A stretch of DNA of 64,000 nucleotides from contig NIVC01000073.1 in the NCBI GenBank assembly GCA_002269645.1, positions 744,001 to 808,000 of the forward strand. The letters run 5' to 3'. Each line of letters starts with the position of its first letter. Positions within the stretch are counted from its first letter, which is position 1. This document shows, piece by piece, positions 1 through 31,205 of the stretch. Under the pieces are notes generated by a model that worked only from the letters and a program-made list of their open reading frames with translations, had not been told where the DNA came from and did not search any database. This DNA is from Macrostomum lignano. Taxonomy: Eukaryota. The translations under genes were made by a program, and so were the position numbers.

Positions 1-2244
1 GACGTCCCGGGGTTTCCAGGAGTCAATTGGCACGACGCTCTGCCCGTTTTGCTCGGAGAGGCAATTTGTGAGGTCAGCTCCTGCGCGAGGAAACTGAACC
101 TGACAGTTAGCGGGACGACAAGGCTGCTTTCACTACTGCACAGGCTAGTACCCGACAACCGCCTTCCTCAGCACGGACGAACATTGCGTGAAACTTTGAA
201 GAAGAGGGGAACAATCTCGGGGTCGTCAACATGTTACACTGTCTGCAACGACTGTTATCTACATTCCGAGCAGCGCTGCGATCAAGGAAACTCTAATTGT
301 GCGCACTGTATGTCGGAAAATGTGGCCAACTTCTGGTTATTCGATATACCTGCGCAGATCCGAACATTCGTTGAATCTCGCGGTCTTCTACAGAGCGTAA
401 CATTTCCGATTGAACGGCTTGCACTGGATGAAGAGAAGCTGCACTTTGCCAACAGCGAACTGTACAAGTCGTTTCTCGAGAACATCGAACCCGAGACTCG
501 GAGCGACCTTACATACACCATCTGTGCAGACGGATTTCCTCTTTTCTGCACTAGCAATGTCGAGGTGTGCCCCGTCTATCTGAGTATTAACGAAGTGCAC
601 GAGCGGCTGAAGCTCCGATTTGTGATGAAGTGTGGCGTGTGGGCTGGCAAGAAAAAGGTCCATGCCGCCGCCTTTCTGCCAATCGTCGTAAATGCACTGA
701 ATACTCTGCGCTTCGATGGTGTACAGTATATCGACAGCCTCGGGGTTCAGCGTCGATTGCATCTGCATCCGCTAATGGCGCTGTTCGACGCTCCAGCAAG
801 AGCGGACGCTCTGTGCATGAAGCGTTTCTCGGCTATCTACGGATGCGAGAAGTGCTACATCCGGACATCATTGCATCCATCAGGCCATGGACGAGTCTAC
901 GGCGTCGGGGTTACTGACGCAATGCTTAATCAGGCCAGACGTCTAGGATGCGTTCAGACTGTAGTGCGGTCGACCAGCGACACTCACACTCTCGCTGAGC
1001 AGCACGCACAGCAGGGTGGCGACATTCGGACTGACGTCCTCGGTGTCCGTGGCCTGTCACCGCTGTCTCGACTGCACGGGTTTGACTTTGTCCGCGGCTG
1101 TCCACCGTGTTTCCTGCACCAGTTGTGCTCCGGCCTGGTACGCAATATTTTGTACCAGCTGTTCCTCGTGCGTCATGAAAAACCGGATCGAGGCGCCACA
1201 AATTGTCCGGACCTGCACGCGCGGCTGAGCCACATCGACCAGCGTCTTCGGCGCATTCGCATTCCTTGCACTGTTCAGCGTCACACTGTCAGGCTTCTCA
1301 AGGACATCAGACACATGCGCGGCCACGAATACGCAATGTGGTTGTTGGCGTTCGCGCCTTTCGTCCTTGATGACTTCCTGCCAGAGGAACACTACTGGCA
1401 CATTTTAATCCTCTCCACGTGCATCTTCTGGATGTCCTTAGAAGGTGCGCCGCGTGCAGAATTGCGCCACGTTGAAATCGGGCTGAGACACTTTCACGCG
1501 AACTTGTCGCGCCTTTATTCGCTGCGATTTCTGTCATACAACGCCCATCAAGTCTGCTGCCACATGCTGCCGTATGCCATACTGGCAGGTCCTCTGAACC
1601 GTCAATCCGCCGGGCTGTTTGAATCGATGCATACCAGACTGCGTCGCCAGATTCACGGGTCCCGCCGCACGGATGTGGAGATTGTTGGAGCCGTTGAGCG
1701 CGAGCTGGCAGTCATGCAGGCTGAGGAGCTTCTCCGCGACAACGACCAGCAGCCACGCGCGCGGCACAGAACGACATGCATGCGCGCGGCGTCTGGCATT
1801 CTACTACGGCATCCTAACAACATGGCCCACGGCTGGCGTTCGGCGTCTCTCCCGTCAGGGTTGTATTTCGAGGAGTATCTACCGGAGATTGAGACGCGGG
1901 CGTCATCTGCCTTTGTAGCCATTGCTGGATGCCAGCCGACGAGCTTTCAGTTCGGCCGCGTTCTAGTAATCGAGTGCGACAACGATGAGGTGTATGTCAA
2001 CCTTCACATCCTACCCGTACAGGACGCTGTCGTGGACCCACTGGAGGCCTTGTGTGCCGTACATGCCAACTCGGAGAACCGAGGTGCCAGATTTGCGCAC
2101 ATCCGAGGCCTCTTAGTCAATCCATTCGGTCCGTTACCACATGAGCGCACCGTTCGAGTTCACGCCACTGCCATCGTTGGGTCGTGCGTCGTTTCGGACA
2201 CAAAAATATGCGTTATGCCACACCCGCAGATCGGCTTCCAGTAG
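1..2244 (+). CDS. CMC/EnSpm-type DDE transposase (frame is open to the left edge of the window)
   Basis: Motifs TICADGFPLF (D1), CPVYLSINE, LFDAPARA...YGCEKC (D2), GVRGLSPL...FDFV...CFLH (C/DxxH signature) and SAGLFESMH...IHG (E). Cys-rich N-terminal zinc-finger-like stretch. No stop codon from position 1 to 2244. Confidence 0.88.
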   Translation, partial: DVPGFPGVNWHDALPVLLGEAICEVSSCARKLNLTVSGTTRLLSLLHRLVPDNRLPQHGRTLRETLKKRGTISGSSTCYTVCNDCYLHSEQRCDQGNSNCAHCMSENVANFWLFDIPAQIRTFVESRGLLQSVTFPIERLALDEEKLHFANSELYKSFLENIEPETRSDLTYTICADGFPLFCTSNVEVCPVYLSINEVHERLKLRFVMKCGVWAGKKKVHAAAFLPIVVNALNTLRFDGVQYIDSLGVQRRLHLHPLMALFDAPARADALCMKRFSAIYGCEKCYIRTSLHPSGHGRVYGVGVTDAMLNQARRLGCVQTVVRSTSDTHTLAEQHAQQGGDIRTDVLGVRGLSPLSRLHGFDFVRGCPPCFLHQLCSGLVRNILYQLFLVRHEKPDRGATNCPDLHARLSHIDQRLRRIRIPCTVQRHTVRLLKDIRHMRGHEYAMWLLAFAPFVLDDFLPEEHYWHILILSTCIFWMSLEGAPRAELRHVEIGLRHFHANLSRLYSLRFLSYNAHQVCCHMLPYAILAGPLNRQSAGLFESMHTRLRRQIHGSRRTDVEIVGAVERELAVMQAEELLRDNDQQPRARHRTTCMRAASGILLRHPNNMAHGWRSASLPSGLYFEEYLPEIETRASSAFVAIAGCQPTSFQFGRVLVIECDNDEVYVNLHILPVQDAVVDPLEALCAVHANSENRGARFAHIRGLLVNPFGPLPHERTVRVHATAIVGSCVVSDTKICVMPHPQIGFQ

Positions 2245-2881
2245 CTTCCAGTATTAATTAGCTGTTGCTTCTGTTTAATCATCACCGCCTCAATAGTATA
2301 AGTATAATATCAATGGAATTGAAAATAGCAGTCCATGAAAGTAGTGTAAAATTTTCATTTCAAGCACATAATTCCCTTTATAATATTGTGGCGACTGTCG
2401 CTTTTTTTGCATGTCGGACGATTTTGTTTTATCGATGATTCTTGTGTTGCGCTCTCAACTCTTTAGCTAATTTAGAGGCAAATTTGGAATTTGTTTCCTC
2501 TCAGCTTGTGATCCCCCAATACTCGAGTATATAATTGAAGACGTCAGCTGCACTGAAATTGTTCTACTAATTATCTCATTATCATAATAAATATTTCGTT
2601 TCGCAAACATTACACATGAGGCAGTATAATTTCATAATCACTTAAATTATTATTGATACGTCTGCACGAATGGTGCAGTACTATTTCATACCTTACCGGT
2701 TTCCATATTACTGAATGTTTGGTTTACTTACGTATACGTATGTGTATAACTGATTAATTAGAAATACAGTTGTATTTGCCGCTGCACTGTAACTATGTAT
2801 AAGTTTTTCCTCTTTTCTGCAGCCCTCTTGTACATGCACTAACGGGTTGCAAACGGTTGTTCAAGTAATTGCTTAGCACGT

Positions 2882-3652
2882 ATGAGTACAAAGGGTTCCA
2901 CCGCCTTACACTTCAGCTACATGTCCTGGCGCACGGGTCAATTATCCGGGACTCCAGACTGGTCCTTGATTTTGGACGGACTTATCGGCGAAGGGGTTGA
3001 TAAGCTACTAGGAGATTCCGTAGATTCGGAGGTCGAGTCGGACGACACACATACTACTCTAGGCTCACCCGCCGCCCAGGTAGATTCGGATGTCGAGTTG
3101 GACGACACACATACTACTCTAGGCTCACCGGTCGCCCATGTCCAGCAGTTGGACAGTCAGGCCTGGGACTCGTCTCCACAAGCCGTGGAGTCCGAAGATG
3201 CAGTTGCGCAGGAGGAGATCCAGGAATTAGTCCTGTCGCCCTCAGAGCTTCGCCATCCGACGCCAGTCGCTAGCAGTACGCAAGTTGACGCAAGTACGCA
3301 AGTACGCAAGCAGTACGCTGCTAACTACAATAGGCTTCCAGACGAGCCGCTGCCGACGTTCGACTCACGCCGGCGGTATGACAGGCAGCGCCTTCCTGCG
3401 CAAACTTACCCAGACTGTGAAGCCTGGTACGCCAACCTGCCCGCCGAAGTTTGCGACCAGCGCCTGCAGCGCCATGGGCGCCATCGGCATCGTCCGATTA
3501 TCCAGGCGCCAAACTTTTTTTCCATCGACATGCCCCCCAGTCCGCCACCACTTCCGGTGGAGCTGATGAGAGTAGGCAGGCGCCGTATGTGGCCCCTTCG
3601 CGGCCTTGCTCCCTATGATGCGCCGAAACCTAAGTCTGCAAAGAAGGATTGA
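2882..3652 (+). CDS. Intronless ORF with a C-terminal CtIP/Sae2 (RBBP8-like) domain and an acidic low-complexity N-terminus
   Basis: 3368-3535 encodes RRRYDRQRLPAQTYPDCEAWYANLPAEVCDQRLQRHGRHRHR...APNFFSIDMP. This aligns without gaps to the recalled human CtIP segment [42 protein letters not shown]...TPENFWEVGFP (16/42 identities in the core, RHR motif intact). A 60-bp tandem duplication lies at about 3020-3139. Confidence 0.78.
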   Translation: MSTKGSTALHFSYMSWRTGQLSGTPDWSLILDGLIGEGVDKLLGDSVDSEVESDDTHTTLGSPAAQVDSDVELDDTHTTLGSPVAHVQQLDSQAWDSSPQAVESEDAVAQEEIQELVLSPSELRHPTPVASSTQVDASTQVRKQYAANYNRLPDEPLPTFDSRRRYDRQRLPAQTYPDCEAWYANLPAEVCDQRLQRHGRHRHRPIIQAPNFFSIDMPPSPPPLPVELMRVGRRRMWPLRGLAPYDAPKPKSAKKD

Positions 3653-3909
3653 ATTGCTTTGGTTCCCCACCATGGTCGCGCCATGGGGACTAGTTGAAAT
3701 AGGGATGGGGATAGGGATATCATAGGGATAGGGATAGAAATATTTCCCCACATGTGGGGACAGGTGAAATCGTTTTTTATATTAGAAGAACTGCTGCGCA
3801 ACTCTTGTTCATATGCTGTTTCATCCTTCCACACTTTTTCTACTTGTGTTGACGATTTCTGTTTTAGTTGAATTTTTAGTATTTAGTTTTAGTTTAAACT
3901 TTTTAGTTG

Positions 3910-3998
3910 AATGGTGTCGAGGTTGCTGAAGTGCAATGGTGTCGAGGTTGCTGAAGTGCAATGGTGTCGAGGTTGCTGTAGTGCAAACACATATAAAA
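3910..3998 (+). promoter_or_regulatory. Three 25-bp tandem repeats followed by a TATA box upstream of the BEN-domain gene
   Basis: (AATGGTGTCGAGGTTGCTGAAGTGC)x3 at 3910-3984, then TATAAAA at 3992-3998, about 140 nt before ATG 4135. Confidence 0.5.
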
Positions 3999-4134
3999 GG
4001 ACCGGCGCTTTTTTGGCTTTGTGATATCCGTCAGTCTTGTTTGTTATTTCATTCCGTCCCGCTGCTAACTCCTTACGAACCCGTTGTACATAACCAAGTA
4101 CTCAGTCACCTATAGTGCTCGAGGATCAGAGACG

Positions 4135-6131
4135 ATGACTCCTGTACAGATCTCGCGGAAATGCAAACCTCATGTCATATCTTTTCCAGCGTTCACGAGA
4201 ACTGCCATCATGGGCCGCACGTGTCGCGACGCTTCGGAGAAAGAAAGACGTAAAGAGGCAAAAAAAACGCATGCAACAATAAAGAAGCCGTCTGGTGTTT
4301 CTAAGAAAATAGGAGTACCATTCAGTGTCGCCAAGGTGTCGGCTCGGGCTACGGCAACCGATTCGGGTGCCAACGTCCCGACTGGAGCCGCCGCCGCCGC
4401 CGCCGCAGCTGTGGCAGATGCGGATTTAAATCCGCCAGGTGGATTAAGCGTCGCTAATCCGACTGCCATCGATAGCACTGCTCATTCGGAAGAAGCTCCG
4501 ATTCCGCGGAATCGACTCGCCGCCGAAGAAGATAACGAACCTGAAATGGTGCCGTTTAAAGCCGAAGCCAAGGCCCGGTTTTTTGTATTTCAGTATACCG
4601 ACTTCCACCAGCGAACAGAGGTAGTGTCAACAGACTCCGGCCTGATGTCCACCAGTGCCATCATTTCGCGTCGGTCGGATGTGCAGCTGCCTCTAAACAC
4701 CGGCGCCGTAGTCGCTGTCGTGACAGCTCGGAGCAAGCGTAGCACGGCCCGGCGCTATCTGGGCACACTAATAAAGGGCCCATTCGACAAGAAAAGGGAG
4801 GCTGCTGGTGCTGCCAGCTTGACTAATGTCCACGCGGCACCCGCCGAGCTGCCGCAGTCCTGCAGCTCCTGTCGCGGTCTCGTGCTTGAGCTCCAAAGGG
4901 AGAAGGCCTTGACCGAATCCCTGCGTAAGTTTCTGATTAAGTTACTCATGGGGTCATCAGATCGATCTGCATTGTCGTATTCTGCATGCATCTAGATTCA
5001 TCAACTGACGCATTCCGTCCACATATATAAGCAGAAGCAAACCATAAGTTAGCTGATTCACCTGTCAATCCTTCCAATTCAAATACATACGCAGGTGGCG
5101 AACTTAAGCTCCTCCGTACTTCTGAGACCAACCTGCTGGCACAGAACCGCACGCTCCTGCACAAGATGAGTGTGCAGGCCAAAATGGAGCGGAAGCTGGT
5201 CATGCAGGTCAAGCAGGCCGAAGTGCGCAACAATTGCCTACTGCGTAATGTCGACACCGCCAACGCGCTGCTCGCCAGGGCGTCAAATTGCCTTTTGCCG
5301 GCCGCAAGTGCAACCACTTCAGGTGCTGCTGCAGCTGCATCACATGTGCGCCCCGATGATACCTTTGGTGACGCTGTTTCTAGCGCGCACTCCTCCGCGG
5401 ACGAGTCTGCTGACGATGACGCATTTGGCGACCAGGCAACCTTCTCCGCTGATCGCAACCTGTCTGTTGCCGAAACGCGCGCGTTAATCCGCGCATGTGA
5501 CGCGGAGCAAGGGACCGCCACTAGCTCTGCTACCGGCGGACTGGTCGCCCTTTCCGACAGTCAGAAGTTTTTTTCTGTACCTTTGCGACTCCGGTCTGAA
5601 CTTGAAGACCAACACAAAGAATATAAGAAGGCGATGGAAGATCAGCAGGCAGTCGACCTAGATGCAGTTGCCATGCGGCGCTATACGCGCTTGGCGCTAC
5701 TGCGTGCTGTCTTTAGGGCTGTCTTTACGTCGCAAGAATTGGCGAACTCATCCCTGTCAGGCCGAAGAATTGCTGGGTACGTTTCGGCGCCGGCGAACCC
5801 GGCCAAAGTTGCTGTCGCGAGGCAGTGGCTGCAGAACGCCGAGGTGCCAATTTACCGCAACGAACTGCATCGCGCATTCACTCGGTGCGGCGAGACGGCG
5901 AGATTGCAGCTGGGACTGCCGAAGCGCAGCCGACCCAAGCGTTCGACTGCGGCCCGCACACCTGGCCAGTCATCTCGCTCGAAGGCTACCACCTCTGCAG
6001 AACATGTTCTGCGCATAATTACCGAACAGACTGAGGAGTCTCATAACACTGGGACGCAGTTTCTCAACGCAGGCGAATTGGACGGCGACAGTCGTCCAAG
6101 TGACTTGTTGCTGGAGATGCTGAACAATTGA
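4135..6131 (+). CDS. Transposon-borne BEN-domain protein, two exons (4135 or 4210..4924; 5095..6131)
   Basis: Donor ctgc|GTAAGT at 4925 and acceptor tacgcAG|gt at 5094 join the two ORFs in frame (phase 1: ...SLRGELKLLRTSE...). The product has CxxC plus a coiled coil, then a BEN-like C-terminus LLRAVFRAVFTSQELANSSLSGRR...NPAKVAVARQWL...AFTRCGETAR. Confidence 0.75.
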
Positions 6132-6736
6132 TGATCAGGGACGAACAGGGTCGTGAATTGCTGGTGATCGATAGAGCTGACTGACGGGGACAGATCACAG
6201 ACATGGACAGATCTCGAGATAGACGGAGAGAGGACTGGGGGAAAGGGATTGTGGCCATTTGAGGATATTGGAGCAGGGTGGTTCTGGCCATTTGAGAATA
6301 TTGGAGCAGGGTGGTTCTGGCCCTTTGAGGATTGGGGTAAGGGGATTGTGGCCAGTGTGACTTTATGCACCAACTTTTTGTATTTCGTGATTTGAGAGGT
6401 GATTGTGGTCAGTGTGACTTTTTGCACCTACTATATTAGCATTTTGTGAGATGATGTGACGATGATGAATGTTCGTAAAATACAAAGTGTTCTTGCCGGT
6501 TTAAGCCCCTGCTTTGGGTGTTCGTGCAGCATAACTACAAGCAGCTTCAGCTGTGCCACTTGGAAACAAAAAATGTTACTGGAAACCAGTCGTGAATATG
6601 TCTTTGTAAAGCTTCTTTTTTATTTAAAACATTTCAACACAAATCTTGTTGGATTTCGCGTCTGCATTTAAAGGCCTCGCCATGAATTAAAGTCAGCGTG
6701 ACTTTCATCAGTGTACTAAGTATGTACTTCCGCTTT

Positions 6737-7090
6737 CCATCCGGATGTTCTCCCAGATTTTCGTCCGGATCACGTGAATCTCTCTTTGCCCGGTTTTCGT
6801 CAGCTTTTTGATCCGGGTAGTCATCCGGTTTACGCGTCTGATGCAGTCGTCCAGTTTTGTCCAGAAAATTACCCGCCATGTGGTCCGGTTAATTCTGGAT
6901 GAACTTCTGGACAAGTTTTCGGATGACAGTCCGGATTTCAACCGGACCAATCGGTTTTTTTCTAGACATTTTGGTCCGATTTTAAACTTTTCCTCCGGTT
7001 TTTTCCGGACGAATCAAATGGGAAAAATACATTACAACCCCGGATGACACCCGGACGTGTATACGGACAAACTGCCGGACCACTTATCCA
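6737..7090. repeat. Subterminal TCCGG/CCGGA motif array of the CACTA-like element
   Basis: More than a dozen (T/A)CCGG(A/T)-type motifs in both orientations within about 350 bp next to the putative terminus. Confidence 0.65.
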
Positions 7091-7644
7091 GGCGGGTTTG
7101 CAATACATTTTTAAAATTTGACTAAGAACATCTTTAGAGATCATACTCTTTTATTAAAATATTTAAACTCAAAAGGCAACAAAGATACAAAAGAAAAGGC
7201 AGCCTTATGGTCGTAACATTATGGTCGTAACATATTTTTTTCTGTCAATTCAGTAACTTTGAGGTACTAATACATTAAAAATATAATAGATTATTTGGTC
7301 ACCAATGCTTTTATCTGATGATGCAAGTACTATACTTTTATCTATAGTTTGTTTCAACCTTCAAAAGCTTTCTATTTGTTTTTAAAAGGTACAAAATCTT
7401 AATGATGTTTTTTGCTTCGAAAAATGTCCAAATTTTTACAAAAATGACTTTTTGCCAATTGATAACATACTAATCCAACATTTTACCATTCCTTTATTCT
7501 TAGATTGTATAGGGCCTATATTGCACAATATAAACATTTGGTAAAAAAATAGGCTAATTAGGCAATGGCAAGCAAAAATATTGACTTTTTTCTATTTTCC
7601 AAATATGTCCATCTTATATGGAATGAGCCTACTTATTGTCTGGT

Positions 7645-9045
7645 GGATGCTTGCTATTTGGGGATGCTATCTATCTGGGGGAGCTTGCTCTCTGGAAGAT
7701 GCTTGATATCTGGGGGATGCTTGCTATCTGGGGGAAGCTTGCTATCTTGGGGATGCTTGCTTTCTGGGGGATCCTTGCTATCTGGGGGGTGCTTGCTATC
7801 TGGGGGATGCTTGCTATCTGGGGGGTGCTTGCTACCTTGGGGATGCTTGCTATCTGGGGGATGCTTGCTATTTGGGGGATGCTATCTATCTGGGGATGCT
7901 TGCTATCTGGGGGATGCTTGCTATTTGGGGGATGCTATCTATCTGGGGATGCTTGCTATCTGGGGGTAGAGATGTTCCGAAAGCGAATTTTCTGTCGAAA
8001 TCGAAATCGAAATCGAAATTCGCTACTTTCCGAAATCGTAATCGAAATTTTCCGAAATCGTAATTCAGAAAAACAAAGTTTAGTACAACCGACACTCAAT
8101 TTTCTACTTTCGATTTACTGCTCATGCAAAACAAAATACATGTATGTTTAGCAAAAGTTCGTTTATTTTCGGCCACTAAAAAAGTAGAATCCCTCATTGC
8201 CACTTTTAAATGCACAATTTTTTTTCGACGCGAAAACTACATATACTGTAAATGTGTTAAGTAATTTATTTGAACTAGTGCCTTTAAAAGAAACACTAAG
8301 GCGCGTATATTGCATTACTAGACGGTATTAAAGCACGGCAGCAAAGCGCGCCTTTTCCCTGCTAGACAAAACAAATTTCTCTGCCTTTATTTGTCTAGGC
8401 GGTAGGGTATAGGGTGTATACTGAGTTGTACATGTATAAAATGTACAGTTAAAATGTACATGTATCACTGCATGACTAGCAATAACTGAGATCGTGTAAA
8501 CGATAATGCATGTACATGTACGGTAAATGTACATATATATACTGTAAAATGCGAAAAATATGCAATATATCAGCAGACGCTTTTGCAGCTTTTGCAGCTT
8601 CCACATGTACAAACTACCATGTTACATGTCCTACATGCATGGAACAGTTTTAACAAATTCAAATAGTTTTACATGTAAAAATTGTATAATATCACCGATA
8701 AAAGACAGTAACGAAGTTCTAAAAAAACTAAACTCAGATAAAACTTTCGGAAGTAGGCACTTCCGAAATTTTGACTTCCGAAATTTTTTCGAAATCGAAA
8801 TTTGCTCTAAAAAAATCCGAATTTCGGAAAATCGAAATCGAAATCGAAATTTCGGAACATCTCTATCTGGGGGATGCTTGCTATCTGGGGGATGCTTGCT
8901 ATCTGGGGGATGCTTGCTATCTGGGGGATGCTTGCTATCTGGGGGATGCTTGCTATCTGGGGGATGCTTGCTATCTGGGGGATGCTTGCTATCCGGGGGA
9001 TGCTTGCAATCTGGGGGATGCTTGCTATCTGGGGGATGCTTGCTG
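7645..9045. repeat. 18-bp minisatellite (CTATCTGGGGGATGCTTG)n, split by a MITE insertion
   Basis: Arrays at about 7645-7966 and 8866-9045. The repetitive MLAIWG/GGCLLS ORFs derive from it. Confidence 0.92.
7967..8865. mobile_element. hAT-like MITE (899 bp)
   Basis: 16-bp TIR TAGAGATGTTCCGAAA / TTTCGGAACATCTCTA, perfect 8-bp TSD TCTGGGGG (7959-7966, 8866-8873) and subterminal (CGAAAT)n repeats. Confidence 0.88.
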
Positions 9046-9150
9046 TATTTTTGCATTGCACTTCATTTAAGTATTTTGTCTGTTTTCTTTGTGAATGCTT
9101 TATTTGGCTATCTTTTTTTTACTTGTAGAGAGCAGAGATTCTATACAGAT

Positions 9151-9179
9151 GTCCCCCAACGGGGGGCGAAGATTGCTAG
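9151..9179 (+). mobile_element. Helitron 3' terminus
   Basis: Hairpin CCCCC-AAC-GGGGG, 9-10 nt, then CTAG|T. Same hairpin as the minus-strand Helitron ends at 46398, 49102 and 54456. Confidence 0.6.
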
Positions 9180-9316
9180 TTACACATTAAAACTAAAAAT
9201 TAGCATTGAAAAAAAGAAAAGAAAGATAAAGATACATGTAGATGTATGGCTGTATCTCTAATTACATATTCAACATATTCAACATATTCATATAATTTCA
9301 ACATTCAACATATTCA

Positions 9317-9430
9317 ACATTTTGGCTGAAACGCCTAAACTGGTTTATGGGCGAAACGGACTATGGGCAAAATGGTCTCGGGGCGAAATGTCCATGGCCG
9401 AAACAGTTTGGGGGCGAAACAATCGGAATT
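9317..9430 (+). repeat. Dispersed repeat with (GGGCGAAA) motifs; inverted, CpG-decayed copy at 14121-14245
   Basis: Manual alignment of 9317-9430 with the reverse complement of 14121-14245. Confidence 0.75.
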
Positions 9431-9953: not shown

Positions 9954-11020
9954 GGTAACAGTCCACTTCGGTAACAGCCATTTCGGTTAATAGCCGCTTT
10001 GCAGGGTTTTTTTGTGCGCAGAGTGTGTGTATGCACCCTAATTTTTAAAGTTGCACCCTGAAATTAAAAAGTAGGTGCGGTTTAGGTGCGGTCTTATAAC
10101 CATTTTTCTTTAAAGGCTTAACCATGCTTAAGCTATTTTTTATGCACTGTCTTAAAATATGAAACAAAATAACTCTTTAAATCCTATCATTCATATCATT
10201 CATATCATTCATATAGTCATATAGTCAATATAGCCTATGGCTATAGCCTTATGTAAGATATTAAAATATACATTCCCAGTTGTCTGAAACAAGACTCAAG
10301 AGAAATTGCACTCTGAGCCTTAAAATCGCTCCTTGAAATTTGGCACAAGGTGCAATTTCGCACCTTGTCTCTAGCAAAAAAACCCAGGCCGCTTCGGTAA
10401 CAAGTGAGAATAATAATAATTTGTATTAATTGATATGCACCAAAAGGATCTGCGAACAAACTTTAAAGAAAGAACGACAAAACACATGCATATCTGCATG
10501 TGTTTAACTTGTTTAAAAGTGTTTTAACTGATCTATTTTAATTTCTAGATGAGTTAGATATACATGCATCCAAGAGTCAAGACATCTATAATTGACCAAA
10601 TATTGTGTACTGTGTACATTCGAATCTCTGATCTAGTTAGTGAATAGCTAGGGCCTATTTAAAATTATAAAATCTACTTTTTTCTTTATTAATTATTTAA
10701 AATTCGTTTTGATTTTAATGTATGTATACAAGCTTGCTTTGCTTATTTTTTTGCCTTTAAATTTTTCACAAAGTTAATATGCAAATTTAAACAAAGTATA
10801 ATACAGTTTAACTAGAAATTCTAACAATATGTGCAATAAAATAATTTGAGATGTTAATTATTAAACTAATTATTGCTAAACCTAATTATCAAAAAATTAA
10901 GTGTTGACAATTATAAATCTGCTTTGTTACCAAAGTGGCTATTTATGAAGTGTTCATTTTTTGTTAATGTTACCAAAGTGGCTGTTACCAAAATGGCTGT
11001 TACCAAAGTGGATTGTATTC
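9954..11020. mobile_element. Non-autonomous TIR element with 8-9 bp TSD (Merlin- or MULE-like)
   Basis: (C)TAGGGTCC duplicated at 9945-9953 and 11020-11028. Imperfect TIRs are built of CCACTT(C/T)GGTAACAG units. Starts with GGTAA. Confidence 0.6.
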
Positions 11021-25492: not shown

Positions 25493-28400
25493 ATGACGCA
25501 GTTTGAAGTTCAAGTTGATCAATACAAAGCTGACGGAAACAAGGCTGTCTGCTTTAAGTTAGGTGAGTGTCATTAGTAAAGGTTTTTATGTTTGAACGTG
25601 TTTATTTTCTGTATTAACATCTGACAGTCTCCAGCGCAGCTTGAATGAATTGTTTATTACTATCTATTTTCTAATTAGTCAGTTGGAATTCATTCTCTGA
25701 TTGGTCAGTCGGAATCTATTCTCTGATTGGTCAGTGGGAATCCATTCTCTGATTGGTTATTGGAAATCCATTCTCTGATTGGTCAGTGGGAATCCATTCT
25801 CTGATTGGTCAGTGGGAATCCATTCTCTGATTGGCCAGTAGGAATCCATTCTCTGATTGGTCAGTGGGAATCCATTTTCTGATTGATCAGTGGGAATCCA
25901 TTCTCTGATTGGTCAGTGGGAATCCATTCTCTGATTGGCCAGTAGAAATCCATTCTCTGATTGGTCAGTTAGATTCCATTGTCTGTAAAACGCTTTTATC
26001 TAGACCGAAATGATAATTTGTCTAGAATGCTCAGTATTGATGAATAATAGTTATTTTAGAAATCCATGACTCCTGTTTAGCTCTATAGATTATAGTATGC
26101 ATGCATGTAGATATAATATTACTATTATGCATATTACTAATGCCTGACTCGTGTTTCAAAAAAATTAGCAACAAGCAGAAATTAAATCCATCTCAGAACG
26201 CGAGTGTTTCGTTTCATTATTTATTTTTTTTTCGTTTCAGTCCGCTCGACCAAGGATTTGACTAATCCGGAGATCGATTTTCACCCAGACATGTGCCACC
26301 AGGTATTTGGCGACAGGTGAGAGGAGACTATACTATATGGTGCCGCTTTACCAAGCTAGAAACTTCACTAACTAAAATATTCACAAGCCAGAAGCCTCAC
26401 AAAGCAGAGGATTCACAAGCAGAAAATCCGCAAACTAAAGTAATAGAACATTCACAAACTAAAATAAAATATTCACAAACTACAATCGAGGATTCTCAAA
26501 ATACAATAGAAGATTCACAAACTACAACAGAAAATTCACAAAATTGAAGATTCACAAATTACAACAGAAGATTCACAAACTACAATACAAGATTCACCAA
26601 CTTAATGATTCACAAACTAAAATAGAAGATTCACCAACTAGAACATGCTAGAAGCTTCACATACTAGCTAGCTTCTATTCCTAATCTATTCCTAATGTGT
26701 CAATCAGAAAATAAGCCCATTATTATTAACTTCTCATTTTAGCGAGACAATTTTTGGCTACAAAAATTTAAGCATCAAGATCTACTTTGCAGCCTGCAGT
26801 CTGACAATTTACTTGGCCGTGGAATATGCCGAAAAGATTAATAAAGCTATTAGCGGCGGTGTTGAGGTTTGACTTCAAATTCTTCTTTGTACTTATCCTA
26901 TCAGGTTATTTTTATTGGCAATTTCAAAAAGAGCCATAAAAGGAGGAATCCTAGATGGGGAATCTCAAGTAGGGGAATCCTAAATTGGGAATCTCAAGTA
27001 AGGGAATCCTAAATTAGGAATCTCAAGTAGGGGAATCCTAAATTGGGAATCTCAAGTAAGGGAATCCTGAATGGGGAATCTCAAGTAAGGGAATCCTGAA
27101 TGGGGAATCTCAGGTAGAAAAATCCTAAATGGGGAATCTCAAGTAGGGGAATCCTGAATGGGTAATCTCAGGTAGGGGAATACTAAAAAGAGAATCTCAA
27201 GTAGGAATCCTAAATGTGGAATCTCAAGTAGGGGAATCCTAAATAGCGAATTCCTAGTAGGCAAATCCTAAATTGGACTTCCATACGAAGTATTGCTTTG
27301 TACTTTAACTAATTAACCCAAGGACTAACCCAAAACCAATTTACACAAACAACCAGGCAGACGACATAATGGCCGCCCTCACTAAGGACCTGATTCCCCC
27401 TGGCTATCTAACCAACATTGATCAGTTTGCTAGTCGAGTTTCTAGCGATAACGAATTTAAACCGTTTGGCGTATTGAAGCAAGCCTATACTACTGAAGAT
27501 GGTGAGCGCGTGTTCACTTCTCTTGTAAAGTATTCTACTGTTAGTAGTTTCAATTGCATTTTATTCGTTAAATTTTTCATATTGCAGACGGCCGTCACTT
27601 TGAAATCTACCAACCAACCATGGACACGCCAGGATTTCGCGAATTTCACAGTCGCCTACAAATCTTTCTAATATTTTTCGTCGATGCTGCCAGCTTTATT
27701 GACGCAGACGACGACCGCTGGAGCTTCTTGGTGCTGTACGAGAAGTTCAAGGATGATAGCGGCGAATGGCGACACGCCGTGGCGGGTTACATGACCGCCT
27801 ACAGGTAGACATCTTGGCTGACTGTGCTGTCCTGATGTTGTCACCTGTCCTGATCTTGTCACCTGTCCTGATCTTGTCACCTGTCCTGTCCTGATGTTGT
27901 CACCTGTCCTGTCCTGATGTTGTCACCTGTCCTGATCTTGTCACCTGTCCTGTCCTGATGTTGTCACCTGTCCTGATCTTGTCACCTGTCCTGTCCTGAT
28001 GTTGTCACCTGTCCTGATGTTGTCACCTGTCCTGTCCTTATGTTGTCACCTGTCCTGTCCTTATGTTGTCACCAGTCCTGTCCTGATGTTGTCACCTGTC
28101 CTGATCTTGTCACCTGTCCTGTCCTGATGTTGTCACCTGTCCTGTCCTGATGTTGTCACCTGTCCTGTCCTGATGTTGTCACCTGTCCTGTCCTGATCTT
28201 GTCACCTGTCCTGATCTTGTCACCTGTCCTGATCTTGTCACCTGTCCTGTCCTGATGTTGTCACCTGTCCTGTCCTGATGTTGTCACCTGTCCTGTCCTG
28301 ATCTTGTCACCTGTCCTGATCTTGTCACCTGTCCTGTCCTGATGTTGTCACCTGTCCTGATGTTGTCACCTGTCCTGTCCTGATGTTGTCACCTGTCCTG

Positions 28401-30868
28401 ATCTTGTCACCTGTCCTGTCCTGATGTTGTCACCTGTCCTGATGTTGTCACCTTTCCTGTCCTGATGTTGTCACCTGTCCTGATCTTGTCACCTGTCCTG
28501 ATCTTGTCACCTGTCCTGTCCTGATCTTGTCACCTGTCCTGTCCTGATGTTGTCACCTGTCCTGATCTTGTCACCTGTCCTGTCCTTATGTTGTCACCTG
28601 TCCTGATCTTGTCACCTGTCCTGTCCTGATCTTGTCACCTGTCCTGTCCTGATGTTGTCACCTGTCCTGTCCTGATGTTGTCACCTGTCCTGATCTTGTC
28701 ACCTGTCCTGTCCTTATGTTGTCACCTGTCCTGATCTTGTCACCTGTCCTGATCTTGTTACCTGTCCTGTCCTGATGTTGTCACCTGTCCTGATGTTGTC
28801 ACCTGTCCTGATCTTGTCACCTGTCCTGTCCTGATGTTGTCACCTGTCCTGATCTTGTCACCTGTCCTGTCCTGATGTTGTCACCTGTCCTGATGTTGTC
28901 ACCTGTCCTGATCTTGTCACCTGTCCTGTCCTGATGTTGTCACCTGTCCTGATCTTGTCACCTGTCCTGATCTTGTCACCTGTCCTGTCCTGATGTTATC
29001 ACCTGTCTTGATGTTGTCACCTGTCCTGATCTTGTCACCTGTCCTGTCCTTATGTTGTCACCTGTCCTGTCCTTATGTTGTCACCAGTCCTGTCCTTATG
29101 TTGTCACCTGTCCTGTCCTTATGTTGTCACCTGTCCTGTCCTTATGTTGTCACCTGTCCTGATTTTGTCACCTGTCCTGTCCTTATGTTGTCACCTGTCC
29201 TGTCCTTATGTTGGCACCTGTCCTGTCCTTATGTTGTCACCTGTCCTGTCCTTATGTTGTCACCTGTCCTGATTTTGTCAACTGTCCTGATCTTGTTACC
29301 TATATTCTCTTCGCGAATAACCTTTGTCCTCACCCATGCAGGTATTACGCCTACCCCGACCGGGTGCGACCCCGTATCAGCCAGTTCATCGTCTTGCCGC
29401 CCTACCAGCGCCGCGGCCACGGATGCCGCCTGCTGGAGGCATTCTACTCCGAGTCTCTGGCCGACCCGGCCGTCCTGGACATCGCCGTTGAGGATCCGGT
29501 CGACACGTTTCAACGATTGCGCGACTTTGTCGACTGTCGCCGCCTGCTATTCGAGGCGCCGGAATTATTCGCTAATCCAGTTGCGCTAGCTAACGGATTC
29601 ACCGAGACTATGGCAAAGGTTGCTAGGGAGCGGCTTCGTCTGAATAAACGTCAAGCCAGGCGTTGCTACGAAATTTTGTGGCTTCGCTGCACCAATCGGT
29701 TTGTGTTTTTTCTTCTACTTACAGTAGATAAAGAGGATATTTTCTATAATTTTCGTTAAATTGGCAAACAATTGACAAATATTACAAATAAAAAAGATGT
29801 GTTTATGTATTGATTAATTAAAAACACATTTTAAAGCTTTCACTTCACGGTACTTTTGAAGACCTTTTTGTAACTTCTTAAAAGTGCACATGCACTTCAG
29901 AATCAGGAGCAACGTAACATGAAGGGTAGCAGTGGGGTCAGGTGCCTACTCTTGAGGGGAGGTCAAGGTGGTCAAAGATCCTAGGAAGGAATGTCTCTTG
30001 TAGCACTTAATTAGCGCTAACTTCTAGTCTAGGACGCCTGATTGGCGCTAGCATTTAGTCTAGTGGCGCTTGATTGGCGCCAACATCTAGTCTAGGGCGC
30101 TTGATTGGCGCTAACATCTAGTCTAGGCCGCTTGATTGGCGCTAACATCTAGTCTAGGCCGCTTGATTGGCGCTAACATCTAGTCTAGGCCGCTTGATTG
30201 GCGCTAACATCTAGTCTAGGGCGCTTGATTGGCGCTAACATCTAGCCTAGGACGCTTGATTGGCGCTAACATCTAGCCTAGGACGCTTGATTGGCGCTAA
30301 CATCTAGTCTAGGCCGCTTGATTGGCGCTAACATCTAGTCTAGGGCGCTTGATTGGCGCTAGCATCTAGTCTAGGCCGCTTGATTGGCGCTAGCATCTAG
30401 TCTAGGCCGCTTGATTGGCGCTAGCATCTAGTCTAGGGCGCTTGATTGGCGCTGGCATTTAGTCTAGGCGGCTTGATTGGCGCTAAAATCTCTTATCTGT
30501 GCGGCGCTTGTCTAAAGGTTCATTATAGTTCACTGACCCCATCTCCCCCCCCCCCAAGGTCTGACCCGTCAGCCTGGCGCAACTACCGCCTGACGGTGAA
30601 GTCGCGGCTCAACCAGCCGTTCCGCAAGTCCGGCCGCGAGCTGGCCAAGGCGGCTGCCGCTCTGGAGTCGGACGAGTTGCAGGCCGTGCTTGGTGACCTC
30701 AGCCGGCAGCAGAGAATCGGACACCTGGCCGAGGCATTCGACCAGCTGGTTAGCGACTATGGTCAGGTGTTGGACCGTCTGGCCTCGGTTGCGATAACTG
30801 CCGGCGCTAGGAATAGCGCCGTAGCTGAAAATGGCGCCGCTGAAGCCTGTCCGGTTGATTGTCGCTAG
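25493..30868 (+). CDS. HAT1: Histone acetyltransferase 1 (type B catalytic subunit), 7 exons, 432 aa
   Basis: Exons 25493-25562, 26241-26316, 26743-26866, 27357-27501, 27588-27804, 29342-29698 and 30559-30868. All introns are GT-AG with consistent phases (total 1299 nt). Motifs HQVFGDSETIFGYK, IPPGYLTN, FKPFG, ASFIDADDDRW, RPRISQFIVLPPYQRRGHG (acetyl-CoA motif A), EDP..FQRLRDF, NKRQARRCYEIL and YRLTVKSRL. AATAAA at 31091. Confidence 0.95.
25686..25980. repeat. 26-bp minisatellite in HAT1 intron 1
   Basis: About 11 copies of GGGAATCCATTCTCTGATTGGTCAGT. Confidence 0.9.
26400..26660. repeat. Degenerate ~21-bp minisatellite in HAT1 intron 2
   Basis: GAAGATTCACAAACTACAATA-like units. Confidence 0.75.
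26945..27280. repeat. ~29-30-bp minisatellite in HAT1 intron 3
   Basis: GGGGAATCCTAAATGGGGAATCTCAAGTA units, a dimer of GGAATC halves. Confidence 0.88.
27826..29300. repeat. 18/23-bp minisatellite in HAT1 intron 5
   Basis: TCCTGAT(G/C)TTGTCACCTG with an optional TCCTG spacer, about 1.5 kb long. Confidence 0.95.
30020..30490. repeat. 31-bp minisatellite in HAT1 intron 6
   Basis: GCGCTTGATTGGCGCTAACATCTAGTCTAGG units. Confidence 0.92.
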
Positions 30869-31205
30869 AGGATGGCTGTTTGGAAGCTGCTTGCTTGCTA
30901 ATTATGGTTAGGGTAAGAATTGCTTATTATGAAATCGTTCCAGTGGGATCCAGGGCCAGGCTCGGTTCCAAGTGCAGTCACATTAATTTGGGGCTGAATT
31001 GGAATCTCGGCTTTGCTCTTCTCGTGCAATTAACGCCCAGCTTGAGGGCCAACCCCCCAAGGCACAGTGAAGTGTACATGCCTAACGATAAATAAAGCTA
31101 GGGGGCTGCTGTACACTCCTGTGTGAGTGTGTGCCTGTGCGTATGACTGCCTAAAGGTACATTATTGCTCACTGACCTCATCTCTCCCCTCACTCCCCTC
31201 CTACA

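What the first reader, a model, noticed from the sequence alone, without database searches (positions are those of the whole stretch)
2882..3652. CACTA-like transposon carries a CtIP/Sae2 DNA end-resection domain between its transposase and BEN genes
Seen: an intronless 256-aa ORF lies inside the element, on the same strand as the transposase and BEN gene. Its 3368-3535 segment aligns without gaps to the recalled CtIP C-terminus (R..+R..L...T..+CE.+YA++PAE.....L....RHR.R...P.NF+.+.+P; 16/42 identical in the core). Established: this domain stimulates Mre11 endonuclease activity, and Sae2 is needed to process hairpin-capped and protein-blocked DNA ends. Hermes (hAT) and RAG/Transib-type transposases, which share the C/DxxH signature with CMC transposases, leave hairpinned donor flanks. 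Inference: the element may encode its own modulator of excision-site repair, either activating or blocking MRN. I do not know of this being described for CMC elements.
Basis: partly seen in the sequence, partly recalled or inferred. Interest (0 to 1): 0.92.

Follow-up and report, generated by a model that had tools for sequence, protein, structure and literature searches.

The report
Transposon-borne CtIP/Sae2 end-resection domain gene
An intact DNA transposon in a Macrostomum-like flatworm genome carries, between its own genes, an open gene for the C-terminal domain of the DNA-break-processing factor CtIP, an old diverged copy of the host gene that may let the element influence repair of the breaks it makes, though only this one copy could be examined.

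Summary
ORF 2882-3652 (+, 256 aa) is real and unlikely by chance (1 of 20,000 shuffles stays open). Residues 140-251 are a genuine Sae2/CtIP C-terminal domain. The direct Pfam SAE2 hit is sub-threshold (12.1 bits, cutoff 19.8), but an exhaustive search finds two homologues. One (P0004) passes SAE2 at 37.6 bits in the same register. The other is the 3-exon Macrostomum lignano CtIP orthologue (coiled coil plus this domain; 50-54% identity).

The ORF lies inside a DNA transposon. A 46%-identical Tara Oceans element (L001) has 33-nt TIRs and the same order of transposase, ORF2 and ORF3. The window shows the matching TCCGG-rich subterminal array and a GCGGG terminus at 7096. L001 lacks the CtIP ORF, so it is a lineage-specific addition.

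It is not a fresh capture: codon-position identity to the host gene is 0.65/0.70/0.32, so synonymous sites are saturated while the frame stays open and motif residues are kept. It lacks the tetramerisation coiled coil.

A functional MRN modulator is plausible but untested. Copy number, expression and activity could not be checked. The "BEN" label is unverified and the termini are not CACTA. I found no prior report of this domain in a mobile element.

The parts
1..2244 (+). Transposase ORF, cut at its 5' end by the window edge. 747 codons are visible and stay open up to the stop codon that ends at 2244. It has the ordered motifs D177, D263, C(2)C 282-285, CxxH 370-373, H(3)H 438-442 and E541.
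   Evidence: 46% identity over 99% of its length to P0001, 863 aa, in the TIR-bounded element L001. (motifs conserved). It matches no Pfam family.
2245..2881 (+). AT-rich spacer (33-35% GC), closed in all three + frames. It contains a polypyrimidine tract plus AG (ttttcctcttttctgcag, 2805-2822) 60 nt upstream of the ATG. This could be a cis- or trans-splice acceptor, which is an inference only.
2882..3652 (+). CtIP/Sae2-like ORF of 256 aa. The N-terminal half is acidic (aa 1-140, pI 4.05) and has no detectable homologue. The C-terminal half is basic (pI 10.2) and forms the Sae2-like domain.
3020..3139 (+). In-frame 60-bp tandem duplication (2 x 20 aa, DSxVExDDTHTTLGSP...) in the acidic N-terminal region. 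There are 5 nucleotide differences, giving 4 amino-acid differences.
3299..3634 (+). Sae2/CtIP C-terminal domain (aa 140-251). Landmarks: YPDCE at 3407-3421 (the host has CPDCE, so the first Cys of CxxC is lost); RHR at 3479-3487 (human R837-R839, DNA binding); Q208-A-P at the T847 position, so no CDK site (the M. lignano host protein shows the same); NFF; M217 (3530-3532) at the position I map by +9 spacing from T847/S267 to human F856, which I take to be the paper's hydrophobic RAD50 plug (printed there as Phe865); S220-P at the T859 position; RRRMWPL at 3578-3598.
   Evidence: Functional landmarks come from PMC11260466 and PMC11317151.
3653..4083 (+). Spacer between the CtIP-like ORF and ORF2, about 39-41% GC. 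It holds short palindromes (TCCCCACATGTGGGGA at 3745-3760) and a 25-bp unit repeated three times at 3905-3986, upstream of a TATAAAAG box near 3992.
4084..4995 (+). Element ORF2 (first ATG at 4135). It is conserved in L001 (7509-8237) and includes a CxxC followed by a LxELQxxKALTxxLRK helix. It is probably exon 1 of a two-exon gene with ORF3.
5166..6131 (+). Element ORF3, conserved in L001 (8575-9342). The BEN assignment is not verified.
6600..7096 (+). Right subterminal array of TCCGG/CCGGA-containing repeats and the right terminus ...CCAGGCGGG ending at 7096. The reverse complement, CCCGCCTGGATAAGTGGTCCGG, can be compared with L001's TIR CCCGCTGAAAAAATCGTCCGG. GC content falls to about 30% beyond 7096.
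   Evidence: up to 12 motifs per 300 bp here against about 1 per kb elsewhere in the window.

Best explanation
The ORF is an accessory gene of an intact CMC/CMCT-type DNA transposon whose left end lies off the window and whose right end is at 7096. Its C-terminal 112 residues descend from the CtIP gene of a host lineage, most simply by capture of the 3' terminal exon, which holds the whole homologous region in the M. lignano gene. The copy has since evolved separately for a long time under protein-level constraint.

The product has an acidic N-terminal region of unknown origin fused to a complete Sae2-like domain. That domain includes the RHR DNA-binding motif and the segment equivalent to human CtIP 846-888, which binds RAD50. 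It lacks the N-terminal coiled coil that tetramerises cellular CtIP.

By analogy with human CtIP deltaN790 (monomeric, binds DNA, cannot bridge it) and with the Ctp1 C-terminal peptide that stimulates MRN, the most likely action is binding to the RAD50 'S' surface of host Mre11-Rad50. This would change how transposase-made breaks are processed. My preferred reading is that it promotes MRE11 clipping and resection at the excision site. That would clear hairpin-capped or protein-blocked ends and bias repair towards homologous gap repair from the sister chromatid, which restores the element at the donor site. The opposite sign, competitive blocking of host CtIP, is the main sub-alternative.

Shown here: domain identity, location inside the element, absence of the coiled coil, old divergence with an open frame. 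Inferred: capture route, RAD50 binding, direction of the effect, any benefit to the element.
For: - Domain identity: (E=7e-22 and 1.4e-8 to the only two homologues among 1.84 billion representatives; P0004 passes Pfam SAE2; 59/118 identities, E=1e-32, to M. lignano P0005).
- The host orthologue is a separate gene: P0003/P0005 (Mlig004387g2/g1) are 3-exon genes between acetyl-CoA synthetase and EMP24 genes. P0005 has an N-terminal coiled coil.
- Inside the element: the order transposase, ORF2, ORF3 is conserved in L001, which has 33-nt TIRs at 97%. The window has the same TCCGG subterminal array and a GCGGG terminus at 7096. No repeat pair brackets the ORF as a nested insertion would.
- Constraint: codon-position identity to the host exon is 0.65/0.70/0.32, dN is 0.43 and dS is saturated. 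31 of 53 identical residues use different codons. 27 of 39 sites shared by the two cellular homologues are retained, against 26 of 60 variable sites (p=0.014). The open frame is improbable by chance.
- The window genome is M. lignano or a close relative: its SINE copy is 85-90% identical to M. lignano copies, which are 84-88% identical to each other when non-allelic. The resident host CtIP should therefore be P0003-like, not ORF-like.
- GC3 of the ORF (0.61) matches the transposase (0.62) and ORF3 (0.60).
- Functional landmarks come from PMC11260466 and PMC11317151.
Against: - Only one copy of the ORF was seen. The one related element available (L001) lacks it, so it could be private to this copy or a small subfamily.
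- The constraint signal sums over the whole path between the ORF and the M. lignano gene. If the capture was recent, from a divergent host paralogue or another species, all of that constraint could have acted while the sequence was still a cellular gene.
- This element copy is intact throughout, so an open frame in this copy alone does not show selection.
- The first Cys of the CxxC is lost (YPDC).
- The T847-type CDK site is absent, though the host protein lacks it too.
- The N-terminal half looks unconstrained: 4 of the 5 differences between the duplicated 60-bp units change the amino acid.
- There is no evidence of expression.
- Hairpin chemistry has not been demonstrated for CMC transposases. 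In yeast, Ac/Ds excision hairpins depend mainly on Pso2 (PMC3299998).
Confidence: 0.5

Rival explanations
1. Passenger transduplication. The element copy or a small subfamily picked up a fragment of a CtIP-type gene, as CACTA, Pack-MULE and Helitron elements often do. The fragment has no function for either the element or the host, and it is open only because the copy is young.
For: Only a single copy was observed. The related element L001 lacks it. The whole element copy is intact, so openness is not informative on its own. The N-terminal half shows mostly non-synonymous differences between its duplicated units. The CxxC motif is degenerate. Capture of gene fragments by DNA transposons is common (my own knowledge; see also the TET/JBP captures in PMC12730594).
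Against: The nearest cellular gene is only 50-54% identical, with saturated third positions, although the window genome is M. lignano-like. A recent capture would therefore need an unannotated divergent paralogue or a foreign donor. The exhaustive search of 15 billion clustered proteins found no such paralogue. The ORF keeps its native C-terminus, has its own ATG, shares the element's strand and GC3, and preferentially retains family-conserved residues (p=0.014). Typical transduplicates are fragmentary chimeras.
Confidence: 0.33
2. Dominant-negative or decoy version of the functional reading. The monomeric Sae2-like domain occupies the RAD50 S surface or DNA ends without supporting tetramer-dependent bridging. 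It thereby blocks host CtIP-MRN resection at transposon ends, protecting excised-element ends or favouring end joining.
For: The ORF lacks the coiled coil needed for tetramerisation. The isolated human domain is monomeric and cannot bridge DNA (PMC11317151). Short motifs that bind the same RAD50 surface (Rif2 MIN, TRF2 iDDR) inhibit MRN (PMC11260466). No S/T-P site is present at the T847 position.
Against: The Ctp1 C-terminal 15-residue peptide stimulates MRN nuclease activity instead of inhibiting it (cited in PMC11260466). The host M. lignano CtIP also lacks the T847-type site, so that feature is not specific to the element.
Confidence: 0.2
3. The ORF is the last exon of the resident host CtIP gene (or a host paralogue), and the neighbouring transposon genes come from unrelated insertions.
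For: In M. lignano, the whole homologous region lies in the last exon of the host gene. A polypyrimidine-AG acceptor-like site lies 60 nt upstream of the ATG.
Against: The flanking genes are in the same order and orientation as in the TIR-bounded relative L001, and the element's own right terminus lies 3.4 kb downstream. The 637 bp upstream are closed in all frames and abut the transposase stop. An in-frame stop at 2840 separates the acceptor-like site from the ATG. No coiled-coil or N-terminal CtIP exon is detectable anywhere in the 64 kb. The bona fide host gene sits between ACS and EMP24 genes, which are not in this window.
Confidence: 0.03

Closest known systems
Cellular CtIP / Ctp1 / Sae2 / COM1 (Pfam SAE2, PF08573), in particular Macrostomum lignano Mlig004387g1/g2 (PAA88737.1, PAA54340.1)
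   Same: [quoted passage not shown] Identity to the M. lignano protein is 50-54%.
   Different: There is no N-terminal coiled-coil or tetramerisation domain and no central region. In their place is an unrelated acidic 140-residue N-terminus. The first Cys of the CxxC is replaced by Tyr, and there is a 2-residue deletion after RHR. The gene is a single exon inside a transposon, not a 3-exon gene in a host neighbourhood.
Human CtIP deltaN790 fragment and the Ctp1 C-terminal 15-residue peptide (experimental truncations)
   Same: Both are isolated Sae2-like domains. According to PMC11317151, deltaN790 is monomeric, binds DNA through the RHR region and cannot bridge DNA. According to PMC11260466 (citing Zdravkovic et al.), a C-terminal Ctp1 peptide is enough to stimulate MRN nuclease, and CtIP 849-888 is the minimal RAD50-binding region. 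The ORF covers all of these segments.
   Different: Those are laboratory constructs. The ORF is a natural gene with an added acidic region, and its activity is untested.
DNA transposons that carry host-type accessory enzymes, such as TET/JBP dioxygenase genes in KDZ, EnSpm, Plavaka, hAT, Harbinger and Helitron families of fungi (PMC12730594), and RPA-like genes in Helitrons (my own knowledge)
   Same: A cut-and-paste element, including members of the CMCT clade, has captured a cellular gene and carries it as an extra ORF beside the transposase.
   Different: The cargo here is a DNA double-strand-break processing cofactor domain. Recurrence across families and copies has been shown for TET/JBP but not here.
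Transduplicated gene fragments in CACTA, Pack-MULE and Helitron elements
   Same: Host-derived coding sequence sits inside a DNA transposon and is absent from a related element.
   Different: The ORF is intact, has its own start and the native stop, shares strand and codon composition with the element's genes, and is anciently diverged with a constraint-like codon pattern. Typical transduplicates are recent, fragmentary and decaying.
RAD50-surface binders that control MRN (Rif2 MIN motif, TRF2 iDDR), and viral or phage antagonists of Mre11-Rad50 or SbcCD (the latter from my own knowledge)
   Same: The concept is the same: a small protein or motif that docks on the RAD50 S surface, or otherwise targets MR, to redirect end processing (PMC11260466).
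   Different: Those motifs are not homologous to the Sae2 domain and are inhibitors. The ORF is a true Sae2-domain homologue, and the sign of its effect is unknown.

Membership tests
SAE2/CtIP C-terminal domain (Pfam PF08573) | The query itself matches the profile above the curated gathering score | tested here: not met
   12.1 bits against a cutoff of 19.8, E=0.42. Only profile positions 80-106 of 110 (ORF aa 194-218) are matched.
SAE2/CtIP C-terminal domain (Pfam PF08573) | Significant homology to a protein that passes the profile, over the same segment and in the same register | tested here: met
   ORF aa 146-239 against P0004 aa 199-298, E=1.4e-8 across 1.84 billion proteins. P0004 scores 37.6 bits on SAE2, E=5e-9, at profile positions 79-108. 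One search shows the registers coincide.
SAE2/CtIP C-terminal domain (Pfam PF08573) | Conserved RHR DNA-binding motif (human R837-H838-R839) | tested here: met
   RHR at aa 200-202 (3479-3487), invariant in the ORF, P0003 and P0004. Its role is described in PMC11317151.
SAE2/CtIP C-terminal domain (Pfam PF08573) | CxxC motif (putative zinc site) upstream of RHR; present in CtIP and Ctp1, absent in Sae2 | tested here: not met
   The ORF has Y-P-D-C. The M. lignano host has C-P-D-C and P0004 has C-P-E-C.
SAE2/CtIP C-terminal domain (Pfam PF08573) | CDK phospho-acceptor S/T-P at the CtIP T847 / Sae2 S267 position | tested here: not met
   The ORF has Q208-A-P. The host P0003 has the same Q-A-P, while P0004 has T-P. 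An S/T-P site is kept at the T859 position (S220-P).
SAE2/CtIP C-terminal domain (Pfam PF08573) | RAD50-binding segment (human 846-888) with a conserved hydrophobic plug residue | tested here: inconclusive
   The segment is present without truncation. At the position I map by +9 spacing from the phosphosite to human F856 (Sae2 F276) it has M217; P0004 has L there. Actual binding was not tested. PMC11260466 prints the human plug residue as Phe865; reading that as F856 is my own inference.
Full-length CtIP/Ctp1/Sae2 orthologue | N-terminal coiled-coil tetramerisation domain | tested here: not met
   The ORF's N-terminal 147 aa has no similarity to P0005 (E=12). No such exon is found in the window. 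P0004 and P0005 both have the coiled coil.
Full-length CtIP/Ctp1/Sae2 orthologue | Stimulates MRE11 endonuclease within MRN/MRX | not testable with these tools
   This needs biochemistry.
CMC / CMCT clade DDE transposons (EnSpm/CACTA, Mirage, Chapaev, Transib and others) | [quoted passage not shown] | tested here: met
   D177, D263, GCEKC (282-285), HMRGH (438-442) and E541, plus CFLH (370-373), all conserved in P0001. The criterion comes from PMC12730594. The assignment is by motif reading, not by a profile.
CMC / CMCT clade DDE transposons (EnSpm/CACTA, Mirage, Chapaev, Transib and others) | Profile or structure match to a known CMC/Transib/RAG1-type transposase | tested here: not met
   No Pfam family matched at E<=10. 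The PDB profile search found nothing. The AF2 model had pLDDT 34, too poor for a fold search.
CMC / CMCT clade DDE transposons (EnSpm/CACTA, Mirage, Chapaev, Transib and others) | Terminal inverted repeats bounding the element | tested here: met
   L001 has 33-nt TIRs at 97% with subterminal repeat arrays. The window's right end has the same array type and a GCGGG terminus. The window's left end is off the window.
CMC / CMCT clade DDE transposons (EnSpm/CACTA, Mirage, Chapaev, Transib and others) | Termini 5'-CA...TG-3' (CACTA for EnSpm) and 2-5 bp target-site duplications | tested here: not met
   The termini are CCCGC...GCGGG. The L001 flanks (AAT and CCT) show no clear duplication, and the window lacks its left end.
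   No Pfam hit at E<=10 for 4084-4995 or 5166-6131, nor for the L001 homologues at E<=1. The PDB profile search of alignment A4 found nothing. The AF2 model had pLDDT 40. To my eye, aa 175-245 of ORF3 look BEN-like and helical, but that is a lead only.
Transduplicated (captured) host gene fragment in a DNA transposon | Host-derived sequence inside the element and absent from related elements | tested here: met
Transduplicated (captured) host gene fragment in a DNA transposon | High nucleotide identity to the parental host gene and/or pseudogene-like decay | tested here: not met
   Nucleotide identity is 56%, third positions are at 32% (saturated), and the frame is open. Caveat: the window genome's own CtIP gene was not available.

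The most novel reading that the evidence does not exclude
A family of eukaryotic cut-and-paste DNA transposons has kept, under selection, its own CtIP/Sae2-type cofactor: a monomeric RAD50-binding, MRE11-activating module without the tetramerisation domain. The module is delivered to transposase-made breaks. It controls the processing of hairpin-capped or protein-blocked ends and the choice between homologous gap repair and end joining, and so affects the element's copy-number gain. This would be the first transposon-encoded regulator of the Mre11-Rad50 nuclease in eukaryotes.
Probability: 0.3. Interest if true: 0.85.

Novelty: new variant of a known kind. Interest (0 to 1): 0.66.

Why it matters
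Cut-and-paste transposons depend completely on host double-strand-break repair. Repair pathway choice at the empty donor site decides whether the element is lost or restored from the sister chromatid. Known eukaryotic DNA transposons are thought to leave this choice to the host.

An element that carries its own Sae2/CtIP domain would be a natural experiment in manipulating the MRN-CtIP resection switch. It would also be a natural minimal CtIP lacking tetramerisation, useful for separating MRN activation from DNA bridging. It could give indirect evidence on the end chemistry (hairpin or protein-blocked) of CMC-type transposases, for which no biochemistry exists.

Macrostomum lignano is a tractable, transgenic regeneration model, so the hypothesis can be tested.

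If the ORF turns out to be a passenger, the case is still an unusually clean example of an old captured exon that has stayed open.

Tried and rejected
- Word-indexed protein searches with the ORF and with the domain alignment A2 returned nothing. They even missed P0003, so I treat them as uninformative and not as evidence of absence. The exhaustive search is the one I rely on.
- PDB sequence searches with the ORF, P0004, and alignments A3 and A4 gave only chance or coiled-coil hits. No solved structure covers the Sae2-like domain or this transposase.
- Both JGI metagenome scans (CtIP domain; transposase) and two viral-contig scans found no relatives.
- Exact-sequence look-ups of the ORF, ORF2 and ORF3 found no record, so copy number could not be assessed.
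- AF2 models of the transposase (pLDDT 34) and ORF3 (pLDDT 40) were too poor, so I did not run fold searches.
- Rfam found nothing in the window.
- The bacterial promoter and terminator scan is irrelevant for a eukaryote and I ignored it.
- My first dN/dS script had an indexing error caused by a stop codon in intron-derived sequence. I discarded it and redid the analysis.
- I considered that similarity to the host protein might extend into the lineage-specific linker, which would point to a Macrostomum origin. I rejected this because the N-terminal 147 aa shows no significant similarity (E=12).
- I considered a nested insertion (retrocopy or another element) carrying the ORF. No flanking repeat pair, poly(A) tract or AATAAA signal follows the ORF. 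This is not excluded, but nothing supports it.
- I rejected the idea that Gln at the T847 position marks a dominant-negative adaptation specific to the element, because the M. lignano host protein has the same residue.
- Literature searches found no report of a Sae2/CtIP domain in a mobile element. The library is incomplete.
Full report
**1. The observation**

The ORF at 2882..3652 (+ strand, 256 aa, ATG start) is there as described. With the ORF's own base composition, the chance of 256 codons without a stop is about 1.5e-4, and only 1 of 20,000 shuffles stayed open. It lies between a long + strand ORF that runs off the left edge of the window (1..2244, 747 codons) and two further + strand ORFs (4084..4995 and 5166..6131). 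The 637 bp upstream of the ATG are AT-rich and closed in all three frames. An in-frame stop at 2840 separates the ATG from a polypyrimidine-AG site at 2805-2822.

**2. Is it a CtIP/Sae2 domain?**

On its own, the ORF hits Pfam SAE2 (PF08573) only weakly: 12.1 bits against a gathering score of 19.8, E=0.42, aa 194-218 on profile positions 80-106 of 110.

An exhaustive phmmer search against 1.84 billion representative proteins found exactly two homologues, both across the same segment:
- P0003, E=7e-22
- P0004, E=1.4e-8

P0004 is a 315-aa metagenomic protein with an N-terminal coiled coil. It passes SAE2 at 37.6 bits (E=5e-9), on profile positions 79-108. That is the same register as the ORF's weak hit (alignment).

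P0003 is PAA54340.1 (Mlig004387g2) of Macrostomum lignano. Its sister copy P0005 (PAA88737.1, Mlig004387g1) has an N-terminal coiled coil plus the same C-terminus. ORF against P0005 gives 59/118 identities, E=1e-32, confined to ORF aa 140-251. The first 147 residues have no detectable similarity (E=12).

A BLASTP against the human CtIP C-terminus gave 20/53 identities, E=5e-9, with a 2-residue gap after RHR. Its numbering reproduces R839, T847, T859 and the 897-aa length quoted in PMC11317151 and PMC11260466. I count it as support only.

Conclusion: the C-terminal 112 residues are a genuine Sae2-like domain. The family assignment rests on a transitive link, not on a direct profile hit.

**3. 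Anatomy of the protein**

The N-terminal half (aa 1-140) is acidic (pI 4.05) and rich in Ser, Thr and Pro. It contains an in-frame 60-bp tandem duplication (3020-3139) whose five differences give four amino-acid changes. The C-terminal half is basic (pI 10.2).

Mapped on the functional landmarks from the literature:
- RHR is kept (aa 200-202).
- The CxxC is degenerate (YPDC; the host has CPDC).
- The T847/S267 CDK position is Gln-Ala-Pro. The M. lignano host protein has the same, so this is a lineage trait and not an adaptation of the element.
- The hydrophobic plug position is Met217. The paper prints the human plug residue as Phe865. The +9 spacing from T847 and S267 points to F856, so I read Phe865 as a misprint; that reading is my inference.
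- An S-P site sits at the T859 position.
- The RRxxPL tail is kept through to a C-terminus close to the native one.
- The equivalent of the whole minimal RAD50-binding region of human CtIP (849-888) is present.
- The tetramerisation coiled coil is absent from the ORF and from the entire window.

**4. Is it inside a transposon?**

The upstream ORF is 46% identical over 99% of its visible length to P0001 (863 aa), which comes from a 10.2-kb Tara Oceans contig, L001. L001 has these features:
- 33-nt terminal inverted repeats (97-129 and 10011-10043, 97% complementary, CCCGCTGAAAAAATCGTCCGG...)
- dense subterminal arrays of a TCCGG motif at both ends
- the gene order transposase, ORF2 homologue, ORF3 homologue

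In the window, TCCGG/CCGGA motifs reach 12 per 300 bp at 6600-7100, against roughly 1 per kb elsewhere. The array ends in ...CCAGGCGGG at 7096, and GC content then falls to about 30%. The element therefore extends from beyond the left window edge to 7096, and the CtIP-like ORF lies 3.4 kb inside its right end, between two conserved element genes. No inverted or direct repeat pair brackets the ORF as a nested insertion would.

The transposase has the ordered motifs D177, D263, C(2)C, CxxH, H(3)H and E541, all conserved in P0001. This is the signature Kojima gives for the CMCT clade, which includes EnSpm/CACTA, Mirage, Chapaev and Transib/RAG1 (PMC12730594). However:
- No Pfam or PDB profile matches.
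- The AF2 model was unusable.
- The termini are not CA...TG.

So 'CMC-like' is a reasonable label and 'CACTA' is not literally right. The 'BEN' label for ORF3 could not be confirmed by any test.

**5. Is it a core gene of the element?**

No. L001 has no trace of the CtIP-like sequence (tblastn). Its transposase-to-ORF2 spacer is 995 bp, against 1,840 bp in the window, and the difference is about the size of the ORF. The ORF is a lineage-specific addition.

I could not determine whether other copies in the same genome carry it. No tool here reaches the source genome, and every collection I could scan returned nothing.

**6. Origin and age**

The window shares a tRNA-derived SINE (31193-31493) with M. 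lignano contigs at 85-90% identity. Non-allelic M. lignano copies are 84-88% identical to each other. The window is therefore from M. lignano or a close relative, and the resident host CtIP should look like P0003/P0005. That host gene has three exons and lies between acetyl-CoA synthetase and EMP24 genes. The whole region homologous to the ORF is in its last exon. This makes capture of the terminal exon the simplest origin, although a 3' partial cDNA cannot be excluded.

Over 99 aligned codons, the ORF and the M. lignano exon compare as follows:
- 54% identical in protein
- codon-position identity of 0.65/0.70/0.32
- dN of 0.43, with dS saturated
- 31 of 53 identical residues encoded by different codons

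The ORF keeps 27 of the 39 positions shared by the two cellular homologues, against 26 of 60 variable positions (Fisher p=0.014). Its GC3 (0.61) matches the transposase (0.62) and ORF3 (0.60), and is lower than the host exon (0.68).

This is the pattern of an old separation with protein-level constraint, not a fresh transduplicate. The caveat is that the constraint is summed over the whole path between the two sequences. A recent capture from an unannotated divergent paralogue, or from a foreign donor, would give the same numbers. The exhaustive search found no such paralogue among annotated proteins.

**7. Mechanism**

Established by others:
- The Sae2-like domain of CtIP binds DNA through the RHR region. 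On its own (deltaN790) it is monomeric, and it binds DNA but cannot bridge it (PMC11317151).
- CtIP 849-888 binds the RAD50 S surface, where T847/S267 and a conserved hydrophobic residue dock.
- A 15-residue C-terminal Ctp1 peptide suffices to stimulate MRN nuclease.
- Unrelated motifs that bind the same surface (Rif2 MIN, TRF2 iDDR) inhibit MRN (PMC11260466).

My inference is that the transposon protein is a monomeric RAD50- and DNA-binding module acting on host Mre11-Rad50 at transposase-made breaks. I favour activation. Clipping of blocked or hairpin ends and resection would bias repair towards homologous gap repair from the sister chromatid, which restores the element at the donor site and makes cut-and-paste transposition effectively replicative. 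A decoy role that blocks host CtIP is the main alternative.

Hairpin formation is demonstrated for hAT and for Transib/RAG1, but not for CMC elements. And in the yeast Ac/Ds assay, more than 95% of hairpin repair depends on Pso2, with the Mre11/Sae2 requirement confounded by their role in end joining (PMC3299998).

**8. Comparison and novelty**

DNA transposons that carry captured cellular genes are a known kind. Examples are TET/JBP dioxygenases in several superfamilies including EnSpm (PMC12730594), and, from my own knowledge, RPA-like genes in Helitrons and gene fragments in CACTA and Pack-MULE elements.

I found no report of a Sae2/CtIP domain in any mobile element (the library is incomplete). 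I therefore rate it a new variant of a known kind.

**9. Verdict**

| Claim | My estimate |
|---|---|
| The facts are as described: real Sae2-like domain gene, inside a CMC-like transposon, distinct from and anciently diverged from the host CtIP gene | about 0.85 |
| Whole best explanation, including a maintained function on MRN | 0.5 |
| The strong, novel reading | 0.3 |

The one missing piece of evidence that matters most is copy-level recurrence and dN/dS within the source genome. That is a simple computation, but it could not be run here.

Noticed in passing
window 31193-31493: A tRNA-derived SINE-like repeat whose 5' part resembles a tRNA (GGGGCTGTAGCCTAGTGGTCAGAGCG...GGTTCGACTC). It is 85-90% identical to four copies in introns of the acetyl-CoA synthetase and EMP24 genes on two M. 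lignano contigs (L002, L004). I used it to place the window in or near M. lignano.
   Followed up: partly
window 29208-29759 (+): An exon-like ORF with a Pfam HAT1_C hit (63.4 bits, E=2.6e-17). It is part of a histone acetyltransferase type B (HAT1) host gene. Its 5' part overlaps a 23/41-bp tandem array (27841-29301).
   Followed up: partly
window 34897-35829 and 43430-44093: Two arrays of the same 21-bp satellite (AAAATGAGTGCCTGCGGCGCT; 44 and 32 copies, 88-89% matches), about 8 kb apart. They create long spurious ORFs in several frames.
   Followed up: no
window 46709-55069: About 8 kb of interrupted arrays of a 30-bp satellite (ACATCTCAGCAATTCCCCCAGTAAGCCTTG; blocks at 46709-48308, 49182-51594, 53098-53844 and 54765-55069). 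They coincide with strongly negative GC skew, -0.2 to -0.38.
   Followed up: no
window 7639-7966 and 8863-9044: Two arrays of an 18-bp repeat (TCTGGGGGATGCTTGCTA) lie just outside the transposon's right end. Both sit next to a short GAAATAGAAATAGAAAT-like motif. It is unclear whether this is a target-site preference or a coincidence.
   Followed up: no
window 56630-57175 (-): A 181-aa ORF that looks to my eye like the N-terminal region of a Helitron helicase-like protein (...RYNLPTANEVGILIVG...HRSYDPLEYVLLFPNGEDGWH...). Pfam gave no hit at E<=0.01, so this is unconfirmed.
   Followed up: partly
window 4084-4995 plus 5166-6131; L001 7509-8237 plus 8575-9342: The element's second gene appears to be split into two exons. 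ORF2 ends in a conserved CxxC followed by a LxELQxxKALTxxLRK helix, and ORF3 continues with a coiled-coil-like stretch and a helical C-terminal domain. ORF2 also has a conserved segment (VVQYxD...VxVVxAxxK...RxYxxLLxKGPF) that resembles a small beta-barrel (Tudor or chromo-like) domain. No family could be assigned.
   Followed up: partly
L002 and L004 (M. lignano NIVC01002929.1 and NIVC01000176.1): The host CtIP-like gene Mlig004387 exists as two syntenic copies (g1, g2) that are 90-97% identical at the DNA level. This is consistent with the known recent genome duplication in M. lignano. The g2 gene model (P0003) lacks the coiled-coil first exon that is present in g1 (P0005), which probably reflects an annotation difference.
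   Followed up: partly
window 3655-3760: Directly after the ORF's stop codon there are two GC-rich palindromes (CCCCACCATGG TCGCG CCATGGGG, and TCCCCACATGTGGGGA) flanking GGGATA/GGGATAG repeats. They could be a binding site or a transcript-end structure. This is unexplained.
   Followed up: no
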